From positions 13,702,001-13,766,000 of the forward strand of contig NC_088860.1 in NCBI RefSeq assembly GCF_963853765.1: a DNA stretch of 64,000 nt. The letters are read 5' to 3'. The DNA is from Magallana gigas. Taxonomy: Eukaryota. Position 1 is the stretch's first letter. Each line of letters begins with the position of its first letter. This document shows, piece after piece, positions 2,802 through 3,873 of this stretch. The notes below the pieces were generated by a model, which did no database searches, was not told the origin of the DNA, and worked only from the letters and a program-made list of their open reading frames with translations. Both the position numbers and the translations under genes were made by a program.

Positions 2802-3873
2802 ATTTCCTTCTGCCTTGCGTCTAGGTGATATCGATGACAATCCCTATACACTGCGAGGACCTTTCGCGAGAGGTATTCGTCGCGCACCAAGGCTCATCAA
2901 CCCGCTACGCTTGGACGACGACAACGACTGGTTACGTTCCGGATCACTGCTCAGAAGAACCAGTTCACCCCTAGTCGGAAGAGGACAATTAGCTACTAGG
3001 GGGCTCACGAGAGGGCTAAGAAGAGGTTTATACTTGGATGACGACAGTGACAATTGGTACACTTCAGTGATGAACAGAGGAAGGAGGCTAGCAAGAGGAG
3101 GCCTGTTTGGCAGAATGAGAAGAGATGATGATGACAACTGGGCCACCTCGGTGATGAACAGAGGAAGGAGGCTAGCAAGAGGAGGCCTGTTTGGCAGAAC
3201 GAGAGGAGACGATGATGACAACTGGGCCACCTCGGTGATGAACAGAGGAAGGAGGCTAGCAAGAGGAGGCCTGTTTGGCAGAATGAGACAAGATGATGAT
3301 GACAACTGGGCCACCTCGGTGATGAACAGAGGAAGGAGGCTAGCAAGAGGAGGCCTGTTTGGCAGAATGAGACAAGATGATGATGACAACTGGGCCACCT
3401 CGGTGATGAACAGAGGAAGGAGGCTAGCAAGAGGAGGCCCGCTTGGCGGACTTACAGGAGATGATGATGATAATGATTGGAGATCTCCTTTCTCCAGATC
3501 AAGAGGTGCCATGGGCAGAATTTTCCGTAATCCTTGGATGAACAACGACGACGACAATTGGAGCCGACCCGGCAGGCTTGGGTTGAGATCTCTAGGTCTC
3601 GGACGGACCTCGCTCAGCCAAAGATTTGGATCAATTGATGACGACAATAATTATGAAAATATGTTCGGACGAGGAGCATTGAGCAATGGTCTGCAAGGGC
3701 TGAGAAATGCTGCAGCGCCATTGCGACTTGACAATAACGATGACAATGTAATAAGTCCCCTCCTTCCTACGACACAGGTTAACCTCGACGACGATGATGA
3801 CGACAGATTCAATAGTCTCAGTTCTCTTCGCTCATCGCTTGGCGGTCCACTTGGAGGTCGCCGCTTTTTTTAG
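2802..3873 (+). CDS. Terminal exon of a low-complexity Asp/Arg/Gly-rich tandem-repeat protein; 5' exon(s) not identified
   Basis: Acceptor TTGTATTTCAG at 2791-2801, then an open frame to TAG at 3871-3873 and AATAAA at 3883. Five near-identical 84-bp (28-aa) units DDDDNWATSVMNRGRRLARGGLFGRMRQ at about 3040-3460, with degenerate units on both sides. Confidence 0.8.
3040..3460 (+). repeat. Coding tandem repeat, 84-bp unit, about 5 copies
   Basis: Unit starts recur at 3124, 3208, 3292 and 3376, an 84-bp period. Confidence 0.95.

What the first reader, a model, noticed from the sequence alone, without database searches (positions are those of the whole stretch)
2802..3873. Lys-free, Cys-free Asp/Arg block-polyampholyte protein with 28-aa repeats
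Seen directly: about 357 aa with no K, C or H and a single E. About a dozen acidic DDD(D)N[WY]-type clusters alternate with Arg/Gly/Leu blocks, and five 84-bp units are near-identical, suggesting recent expansion. Two readings are possible. One is a coacervating or Ca2+-binding shell-matrix or adhesive protein, since poly-Asp/Arg low-complexity proteins are typical of mollusc biomineral matrices. The other is a processed precursor: each unit contains G-RR and F-G-R, which would yield DDDDNWATSVMNR-amide and LARGGLF-amide. I recognise no named family.
Basis: partly seen in the sequence, partly recalled or inferred. Interest (0 to 1): 0.7.

Follow-up and report, generated by a model that had tools for sequence, protein, structure and literature searches.

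The report
Oyster-only secreted Asp/Arg repeat protein
This is the main coding exon of a real, spliced and expressed Pacific oyster gene, found only in cupped oysters, for a secreted, disordered protein built of 28-residue aspartate-cluster/arginine units; it is most likely cut into small peptides, but neither its processing nor its tissue is shown yet.

Summary
Window 2802-3873 (+) is the last exon of Magallana gigas LOC117689732 (XP_034327379, annotated "uncharacterized"). It has 356 codons with no Lys, Cys or His and one Glu. It carries 12 Asp clusters and an 84-bp x 5 tandem array.

- **Gene model:** a signal-peptide exon lies 6.9 kb upstream, outside the window. Contigs in two runs join it to 2802. 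A stranded poly(A) run reads the + strand.
- **Distribution:** the gene is single copy, syntenic with C. virginica, and detectable only in Crassostrea/Magallana. There is no Pfam hit and no Atlas look-alike. AlphaFold2 gives pLDDT 40.
- **Architecture:** the whole mature protein has a ~28-residue period in both genera. Each unit is an Asp cluster, then W/Y/F, then an Arg-rich tail. Arg is never exchanged for Lys, nor Asp for Glu.
- **Conservation:** one 22-residue block (SVMNR-G-RR, then LARGGLF-G-R) is almost invariant. It has pN 0.04 at saturated pS, against 0.33 overall.

Best reading (about 0.45): a convertase-cut, amidated multi-peptide precursor. Main rival (about 0.3): an uncut block polyampholyte for coacervation, mineral or adhesive. 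RR sites occur only at chance frequency. The gene is absent from the oyster neuropeptide catalogue I could check. The tissue of expression could not be obtained.

The parts
2800..2801 (+). Splice acceptor AG. It is the end of a ~6.9-kb phase-2 intron; the signal-peptide exon lies outside the window at G000:C8:13697797-13697866 (= L002:5797-5866).
   Evidence: Contigs of runs X1 and X10 carry, just before 2800, letters identical to the end of exon 1 (exon 1).
2802..3873 (+). Last (main) coding exon of LOC117689732 / XP_034327379. It encodes residues 23-379 of a 379-aa secreted protein; the stop codon TAG is at 3871-3873.
   Evidence: The protein is 100% identical to P0001.
3048..3470 (+). Tandem array of 84-bp (28-aa) units: 5.0 copies, four of them near-identical.
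3049..3114 (+). First copy of conserved block A (22 aa): an aromatic residue, then SVMNR-G-RR, then LARGGLF-G-R. RGRR is a furin-type R-x-R-R site with a Gly amidation signal.
   Evidence: M. gigas vs C. virginica gives pN 0.04 at pS 0.73, against pN 0.33 for the whole protein.
3637..3702 (+). Conserved block B: an Asp cluster, then YENMF-G-R, then a conserved Leu/Gln/Gly stretch. It holds the only Glu of the protein, which is invariant in all orthologues.
   Evidence: The site reads G-R-R in C. angulata LOC128180062 and in the unnamed species (P0004).
3883..3888 (+). AATAAA polyadenylation signal. RNA contigs end at 3902 (X1) and 3917 (X10).

Best explanation
The stretch is the main exon of a single-copy gene found only in cupped oysters. 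The product enters the secretory pathway through a 17-residue signal peptide. It is an intrinsically disordered chain of about twelve 28-residue units, each an Asp cluster, one aromatic residue and an Arg-rich tail.

I think it most likely acts as a pro-protein. Furin/PC-type convertases would cut after RGRR and the other conserved RR sites. Carboxypeptidase and the amidating enzyme would then use the preceding Gly. This would release repeated small peptides ending in ...SVMNR-amide and LARGGLF-amide, four to five copies in M. gigas and one in C. virginica. A peptide ending in ...YENMF-amide would come from the second conserved block.

The Asp clusters would serve as charge-neutralising and Ca2+-condensing spacers, or as the N-terminal parts of the peptides. 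The five-copy array arose by recent 84-bp unequal crossing-over.

Shown: the gene model, splicing, expression, secretion signal, disorder, periodicity and the conservation pattern. Inferred: cleavage, amidation and any signalling role.
For: - **Secretion signal:** the signal peptide is conserved in M. gigas, C. angulata and C. virginica. Exon 1 has a GT donor and the phases match.
- **Expression:** spliced exon1-exon2 contigs occur at k-mer depth of roughly 1000-9000 in X1 and X10, while the unique flank 4520-6000 has about 0. The DNA run X16 is flat at about 14-19. In the stranded poly(A) run X22, first mates lie only on the minus strand, as expected for a + strand RNA in most stranded libraries.
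- **Block A:** it carries the G-RR and F-G-R sites and has pN 0.04 against 0.33 for the whole protein, with synonymous sites saturated.
- **F-G-R:** it occurs twice in C. virginica where 0.1 is expected (P=0.009), and both copies are conserved.
- **Block B:** the site reads G-R-R in two relatives, and the only Glu of the protein sits four residues before it and is invariant.
- **Copy number:** the conserved unit varies between lineages (1, 4, 5 copies) while its sequence stays fixed. This is what multi-copy peptide precursors do (established knowledge of FMRFamide-type precursors).
- **No fold:** pLDDT is 40.
Against: - RR dipeptides are no more frequent than in shuffles: 11 vs 10.7 in M. gigas and 9 vs 10.4 in C. 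virginica.
- Only about four RR sites keep their position between the genera.
- The last ~150 residues of the M. gigas protein have no dibasic site except at the very end, yet keep the periodic design.
- The most conserved residue types are W, Y, D and R. R is never replaced by K, nor D by E (0 of 23 each), although 47 of 61 Arg codons are AGA/AGG. Cleavage sites alone would not demand that.
- The unnamed species has RGRS in its only unit.
- The F-G-R sites lack the Arg at P4/P6/P8 that usually accompanies monobasic cleavage. This rests on the sequence and on a rule recalled from the literature.
- The gene, its accession and its predicted peptides are absent from the text and the held supplements of the oyster ganglion transcriptome/peptidome paper (PMC8398477). 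They are also absent from the text of Stewart 2014.
- It was assembled at high depth in runs from many studies, which hints at expression in a commonly sampled tissue rather than only in neurons.
Confidence: 0.45

Rival explanations
1. An uncut structural block polyampholyte. The secreted disordered chain would work as a polymer. Asp clusters would bind Ca2+ or calcite. Arg-rich tails and the aromatic residues would act as 'stickers' (Arg-Asp salt bridges, Arg-pi contacts), driving self-coacervation in shell formation, cement or mucus.
For: - The ~28-residue period covers the whole mature protein in both genera, not only the recent repeat. Cluster spacing is 27-33, and Asp autocorrelation has z=6-10 at lags 28/29 and 56/57.
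- All 10 Asp/Asn runs in C. virginica, and 10 of 12 in M. gigas, are followed within two residues by W/Y/F.
- Net charge per residue is held at +0.041 to +0.042 in four proteins, and charge segregation is z=6-8.
- Conservation is highest for W, Y, D and R and lowest for S, T, A and I. Lys and Glu are strictly excluded although they are one base change away.
- The protein is disordered.
- Assembly at high depth in many studies suggests an abundant secretory product.
Against: - A pure composition or patterning role does not explain a 22-residue block that is position-for-position invariant across saturated synonymous divergence. It also does not explain the invariant single Glu before F-G-R.
- The protein is net basic with only 13% Asp, unlike acidic matrix proteins.
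- It was not found in the held supplements of two oyster shell-protein papers. This is a weak test.
- The tissue is unknown.
Confidence: 0.3
2. A host-defence multi-peptide precursor. Each unit would be an anionic pro-piece (the Asp cluster) masking a cationic, weakly helical Arg-rich peptide that proteases release into mucus or haemolymph.
For: - Anionic and cationic blocks alternate, and the protein carries a secretion signal.
- Weak helices are predicted right after each Asp cluster.
- R-x-R-R sites are present.
- Expression appears abundant.
Against: - There is no cleavage site between the Asp cluster and the following aromatic residue, so the pro-piece could not be removed by the usual route.
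- The core unit is invariant between genera, whereas antimicrobial peptides usually diversify quickly.
- The predicted peptides are short and not clearly amphipathic (inference).
Confidence: 0.1
3. A source of water-borne arginine-ended peptide cues; see the novel case. Trypsin-like or convertase cutting of this Lys-free, Arg-rich secreted protein would release many 0.5-1 kDa peptides with C-terminal Arg into the water.
For: - The protein is 17% Arg with no Lys, is secreted, is restricted to oysters and is well expressed.
- Water-borne cues from adult oysters are on record (PMC3861396).
- The requirement for a C-terminal Arg is from my own memory of Zimmer-Faust and Tamburri 1994. I did not check it here.
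Against: There is no direct evidence. No tissue, secretion route or peptide data are available, and many proteins yield Arg-ended fragments.
Confidence: 0.05

Closest known systems
Multi-copy amidated neuropeptide precursors of molluscs (FMRFamide-type; oyster precursors listed in PMC8398477)
   Same: Signal peptide, most of the protein on one exon, and tandem copies of one conserved short sequence followed by Gly plus basic residues. Acidic stretches lie between copies, and copy number differs between lineages.
   Different: There is no Lys at all, whereas KR is the usual site. RR occurs only at chance frequency. The acidic clusters plus an aromatic residue are the best conserved elements rather than variable spacers. 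Half of the protein has no dibasic site. It is not in the oyster catalogue or ganglion peptidome that I could check.
Pif80 and other charged shell-matrix proteins of pearl oysters (recalled from the literature, not tested here)
   Same: Secreted, disordered, rich in Asp and basic residues in short alternating motifs. They are made from a precursor with a furin-type site and are reported to coacervate with Ca2+.
   Different: There is no sequence similarity in any search. This protein is net basic, uses only Arg, has a strict 28-residue period with Trp, and has no evidence of being in shell.
Aspein/Asprich-type poly-Asp matrix proteins
   Same: Asp is preferred over Glu, Asp occurs in runs, and the proteins are secreted and lineage-restricted.
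   Different: Those proteins are 50-60% Asp and extremely acidic. This one is 13% Asp with net charge +15.
Charge-block / RGG-type phase-separating disordered proteins (e.g. Ddx4 N-terminus; recalled, not tested)
   Same: Alternating charge blocks, Arg preferred to Lys, and conserved aromatic residues.
   Different: Those proteins are intracellular. This one is secreted and has a regular tandem-repeat origin.

Membership tests
Proprotein-convertase-processed, amidated peptide precursor | N-terminal signal peptide | tested here: met
   The sequence has a charged start, a 12-residue hydrophobic core and A-S-A before Gln. It is conserved in three species. No SignalP tool was available, so this is judged from the sequence.
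Proprotein-convertase-processed, amidated peptide precursor | Peptide copies flanked on both sides by basic cleavage sites | tested here: inconclusive
   RGRR follows each of five units. However, the RR count equals chance, the upstream flank of most units is R-x-R-[G/Q] rather than dibasic, and the C-terminal 150 aa lacks dibasic sites.
Proprotein-convertase-processed, amidated peptide precursor | Gly before the basic site, conserved across species | tested here: met
   R-G-R and F-G-R columns are invariant in the four-sequence alignment. F-G-R is enriched in C. virginica with P=0.009. One exception: RGRS in P0004.
Proprotein-convertase-processed, amidated peptide precursor | Conservation concentrated in the predicted peptides | tested here: met
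   Block A has pN 0.04 and block B 0.13, against 0.33 overall at saturated pS.
Proprotein-convertase-processed, amidated peptide precursor | Peptides detected, or gene listed, in neuropeptide surveys of the species | tested here: not met
   There are no occurrences of the accession, the locus name or the peptide strings in the text and held supplements of PMC8398477, or in the text of PMC4200219. This is a limited test, because only the held files were searched.
Proprotein-convertase-processed, amidated peptide precursor | Expression in neurons or endocrine cells | not testable with these tools
   Run identities are coded. The Logan protein contigs come from DNA runs.
Acidic Asp-rich shell-matrix proteins | Strongly acidic, Asp-dominated composition | tested here: not met
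   The mature protein has D 47 and R 63 of 362 residues, with net charge per residue +0.041.
Acidic Asp-rich shell-matrix proteins | Present in shell proteomes / mantle expression | tested here: inconclusive
   It was not found in the held supplements of PMC9456362 and PMC5379566. Two other papers have no held supplements. Mantle expression is not testable.
Block-polyampholyte, phase-separating disordered protein | Disorder with segregated charge blocks and conserved Arg/aromatic stickers | tested here: met
   pLDDT is 40. Charge segregation is z=6-8. Conservation is W 80%, Y 75%, D 74% and R 71%, with no R-to-K or D-to-E exchange.
Block-polyampholyte, phase-separating disordered protein | Demonstrated phase separation | not testable with these tools
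   This needs recombinant protein.
Cationic antimicrobial multi-peptide precursor | Cleavage sites that free each cationic peptide from its anionic pro-piece | tested here: not met
   An Asp cluster is followed directly by W/Y/F, and D-R occurs once where 8 are expected.

The most novel reading that the evidence does not exclude
The protein is the long-sought genetic source of the water-borne, arginine-ended small peptides by which adult oysters attract settling larvae. In this reading, a Lys-free, 17%-Arg secreted protein restricted to reef-building cupped oysters is chopped after Arg into many 0.5-1 kDa peptides. The invariant block would give the specific, most potent ones.
Probability: 0.05. 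Interest if true: 0.85.

Novelty: new variant of a known kind. Interest (0 to 1): 0.45.

Why it matters
Oysters have few lineage-specific secreted genes with a clear design, and this one is expressed, constrained and unstudied.

If it is a peptide precursor, it adds an oyster-only signalling, pheromone or defence peptide family that two dedicated surveys missed. If it is an uncut polyampholyte, it is a natural Arg/Asp/Trp-only coacervating sequence with a strict 28-residue grammar. That would interest people who work on shell, cement and bio-inspired materials.

The total exclusion of Lys and Glu, although both lie one base change away, is an unusually clean natural experiment on why Arg and Asp are chosen over them.

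Tried and rejected
- **Family and look-alike searches gave nothing useful.** Pfam gave only noise, with E above 0.1. ESM Atlas gave no usable hit for two proteins.
- **Homology searches reached only oysters.** Two word-indexed searches and one full HMM profile search of 1.84 billion representatives found only oyster proteins.
- **Two weak profile hits were rejected.** P0031 and P0032 (E 2e-5 and 5e-4) carry a 30-residue Asp6-Asn...RR repeat inside chimeric or integrase-bearing proteins of another organism. Only their integrase part matches the oyster genome. I take the resemblance as compositional.
- **No paralogue** is in the genome.
- **Literature searches were blank.** Searches for peptide strings and for locus, accession and UniProt ids found nothing. 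A search for the Gly-Gly-Arg settlement cue also found nothing.
- **Tissue could not be obtained.** Run ids are coded. All Logan contigs behind the protein hits proved to be genomic DNA, because they include intron or post-poly(A) sequence.
- **Motif resemblances to myomodulin (LRL-Gly) and bag-cell peptides (APRL) were dropped.** The Gly is followed by Asp, not by a basic residue, and the motifs are not kept in C. virginica.
- **The minus-strand ORFs** (2844-3647 and 3005-3430) are by-products of the repeat. Stranded reads support the + strand only.

Full report
**What is there.** Window 2802-3873 (+) is an open frame that starts just after a polypyrimidine tract and the acceptor cag. Its translation has 356 codons: R61, G47, D47, L43 and N28, with no Lys, Cys or His and one Glu. 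Tandem Repeats Finder reports an 84-bp unit, 5.0 copies at 94% matches, at 3048-3470. Read in register, four units differ from their consensus at 1-3 of 84 bases. Most of those differences fall in the codon just before the Asp run. The two flanking units are diverged at 31-33 of 84 bases.

**It is a real gene.**
- The translation is 100% identical to a 379-aa RefSeq model of Magallana gigas annotated "uncharacterized protein" (XP_034327379, LOC117689732; UniProt fragment K1QBU2).
- The missing 23 residues are a signal peptide plus QLSLR. They are encoded 6.9 kb upstream, outside the window, at G000:C8:13697797-13697866. That exon has a GT donor, and its phase fits base 2802.
- In runs X1 and X10, contigs that lie on 2800-3096 carry the last letters of that exon just before 2800. 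Depth over the exon is about 1000-9000, while the unique flank 4520-6000 has about zero. The DNA run X16 is flat at 14-19 and crosses the intron/exon border.
- In the stranded poly(A) run X22, every pair has its first mate on the minus strand. That is what most stranded libraries give for a + strand RNA.
- RNA contigs end at 3902 and 3917, 14-29 bases after AATAAA at 3883-3888.
- I did not search a typed spliced model. The database protein P0001 stood in for it.

**Distribution.**
- The gene is single copy in this genome.
- Relatives were found only in cupped oysters: C. angulata LOC128181210 (5 units), C. angulata LOC128180062 (4 units, 17 kb away on the same strand), C. virginica LOC111099821 (326 aa, one canonical unit), and an unnamed species from a DNA run (P0004, one unit).
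- A profile search that read all 1.84 billion representative proteins added only two weak, compositional hits.
- In C. virginica the gene lies just upstream of a cytochrome P450 gene. The exons of that P450 match window 8201-12465 in the same order and strand, so the genes are orthologous by synteny.
- There is no Pfam family and no Atlas look-alike. AlphaFold2 gives mean pLDDT 40, with only weak helices right after the Asp clusters.

**Architecture.**
- The recent 5-copy array sits inside a much older design. Cutting the mature proteins at their acidic clusters gives units of 27-33 residues over the whole length, in both M. gigas and C. virginica.
- Asp autocorrelation peaks at lags 28/29 and 56/57, with z=6-10.
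- All 10 Asp/Asn runs in C. virginica, and 10 of 12 in M. gigas, are followed within two residues by W, Y or F. Overall aromatic content is 7-9%.
- D-R dipeptides occur once where 8 are expected.
- Net charge per residue is +0.041 to +0.042 in all four proteins, and charge segregation is 6-8 SD above shuffles.

**Selection.**
- Between M. gigas and C. virginica, synonymous sites are saturated (pS 0.78) and pN is 0.33. Between M. gigas and the unnamed species, omega is 0.32-0.36.
- One 22-residue block (window 3049-3114 and its copies) has pN 0.04 at pS 0.73. A second block (3637-3702) has pN 0.13. Block A holds SVMNR-G-RR followed by LARGGLF-G-R. Block B holds YENMF-G-R, preceded by the protein's only Glu, which is invariant.
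- By residue type, W, Y, D and R are the best kept (71-80%), and S, T, A and I the worst.
- Of 23 Arg replacements and 23 Asp replacements between the genera, none is to Lys or to Glu. This holds although 47 of 61 Arg codons are AGA/AGG.
- Eleven C. virginica alleles are 98-100% identical in protein.
- M. gigas against C. angulata copy A shows omega near 1 at dS 0.026, based on few changes. None of those changes touches the SVMNR-G-R core in any copy.

**Weighing the readings.** In favour of a cut, amidated multi-peptide precursor:
- A secretion signal is present.
- The invariant block is centred on an R-x-R-R site with Gly before it.
- There are two conserved F-G-R sites, one of which reads G-R-R in two relatives.
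- Copy number varies between lineages while the unit sequence stays fixed.

Against it:
- RR dipeptides are exactly as frequent as in shuffles: 11 vs 10.7 and 9 vs 10.4.
- Only about four RR sites keep their place between genera, and half of the M. gigas protein has none.
- One species has RGRS in its only unit.
- The strict Arg-not-Lys and Asp-not-Glu rule, and the conserved Asp-cluster-plus-aromatic, are not what cleavage sites and spacers need.
- The gene is missing from the oyster ganglion transcriptome/peptidome paper.

Those last features fit an uncut block polyampholyte that works through Ca2+/mineral binding and Arg-Asp/Arg-aromatic cohesion. That reading in turn cannot explain a position-for-position invariant block, and the protein is net basic, unlike acidic matrix proteins.

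I put the precursor at about 0.45, the structural polymer at about 0.3, a defence-peptide precursor at about 0.1 and a water-borne cue source at about 0.05. A mixed role, a furin-cut matrix protein, is possible.

**Repeat number.** Three chromosome-level assemblies carry five units (P0001, P0008, P0006). Contigs from three independent DNA runs (L005, L007, L008) are 96-98% identical to the window and run without a break from the first unit into the last. That gives an in-frame one-unit form. By contrast, the contigs of X1, X10 and X16 break at the array borders, 3096 and 3410. This suggests a real 1-unit/5-unit polymorphism. Short-read assembly cannot prove it.

**Limits.** The tissue of expression, the one fact that would best separate the readings, could not be obtained. 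The literature tests cover only the text and supplements held in the library. The scan's earlier notes hold only this same stretch read again (s1-403276) and an unrelated putative peptide-precursor gene 31 kb downstream (s1-403242).

Noticed in passing
window 8201-12465 (+): Exons of a cytochrome P450 gene, colinear with the P450 gene just downstream of the C. virginica orthologue (L006:11212-17586). This gives synteny support for orthology.
   Followed up: partly
window 1500-2700 and 3916-4519: The flanks of the exon are high-copy dispersed repeats. Summed contig depth in the DNA run X16 is tens of thousands, against about 14-19 over the exon and the unique flank, and there are many loose ends.
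   Followed up: no
window 918-1019: A short tandem array of a palindromic ~17/36-bp unit (GGGGGAAAAGCTACTATATAGTAGC...), seen. It looks like part of a mobile element end.
   Followed up: no
L015 and L016 (C. angulata CM046779.1, 38.56-38.60 Mb): C. angulata carries two copies on the same strand about 17 kb apart, LOC128181210 and LOC128180062. Copy B differs from copy A and from the M. gigas gene at dS 0.20. This M. gigas assembly has only one copy. This is either a lineage-specific tandem duplicate or loss, or an assembly difference.
   Followed up: partly
L005, L007, L008 versus window 3137-3384: Contigs from three DNA runs carry an in-frame one-unit form of the array. This is a likely copy-number allele (1 versus 5 units).
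   Followed up: partly
P0031, P0032 (not in the window): Proteins of another organism carry a 30-residue tandem unit (Asp6-Asn, a Ser-rich stretch, then ...GRPTRRGL) that loosely mirrors the oyster unit. It sits in integrase-bearing or chimeric gene models, and the repeat part is absent from the oyster genome.
   Followed up: partly
window 2844-3647 (-) and 3005-3430 (-): Long antisense ORFs (267 and 141 aa) run across the repeat. They are by-products of its codon make-up, and no read supports minus-strand RNA.
   Followed up: yes
I did not examine it.
   Followed up: no
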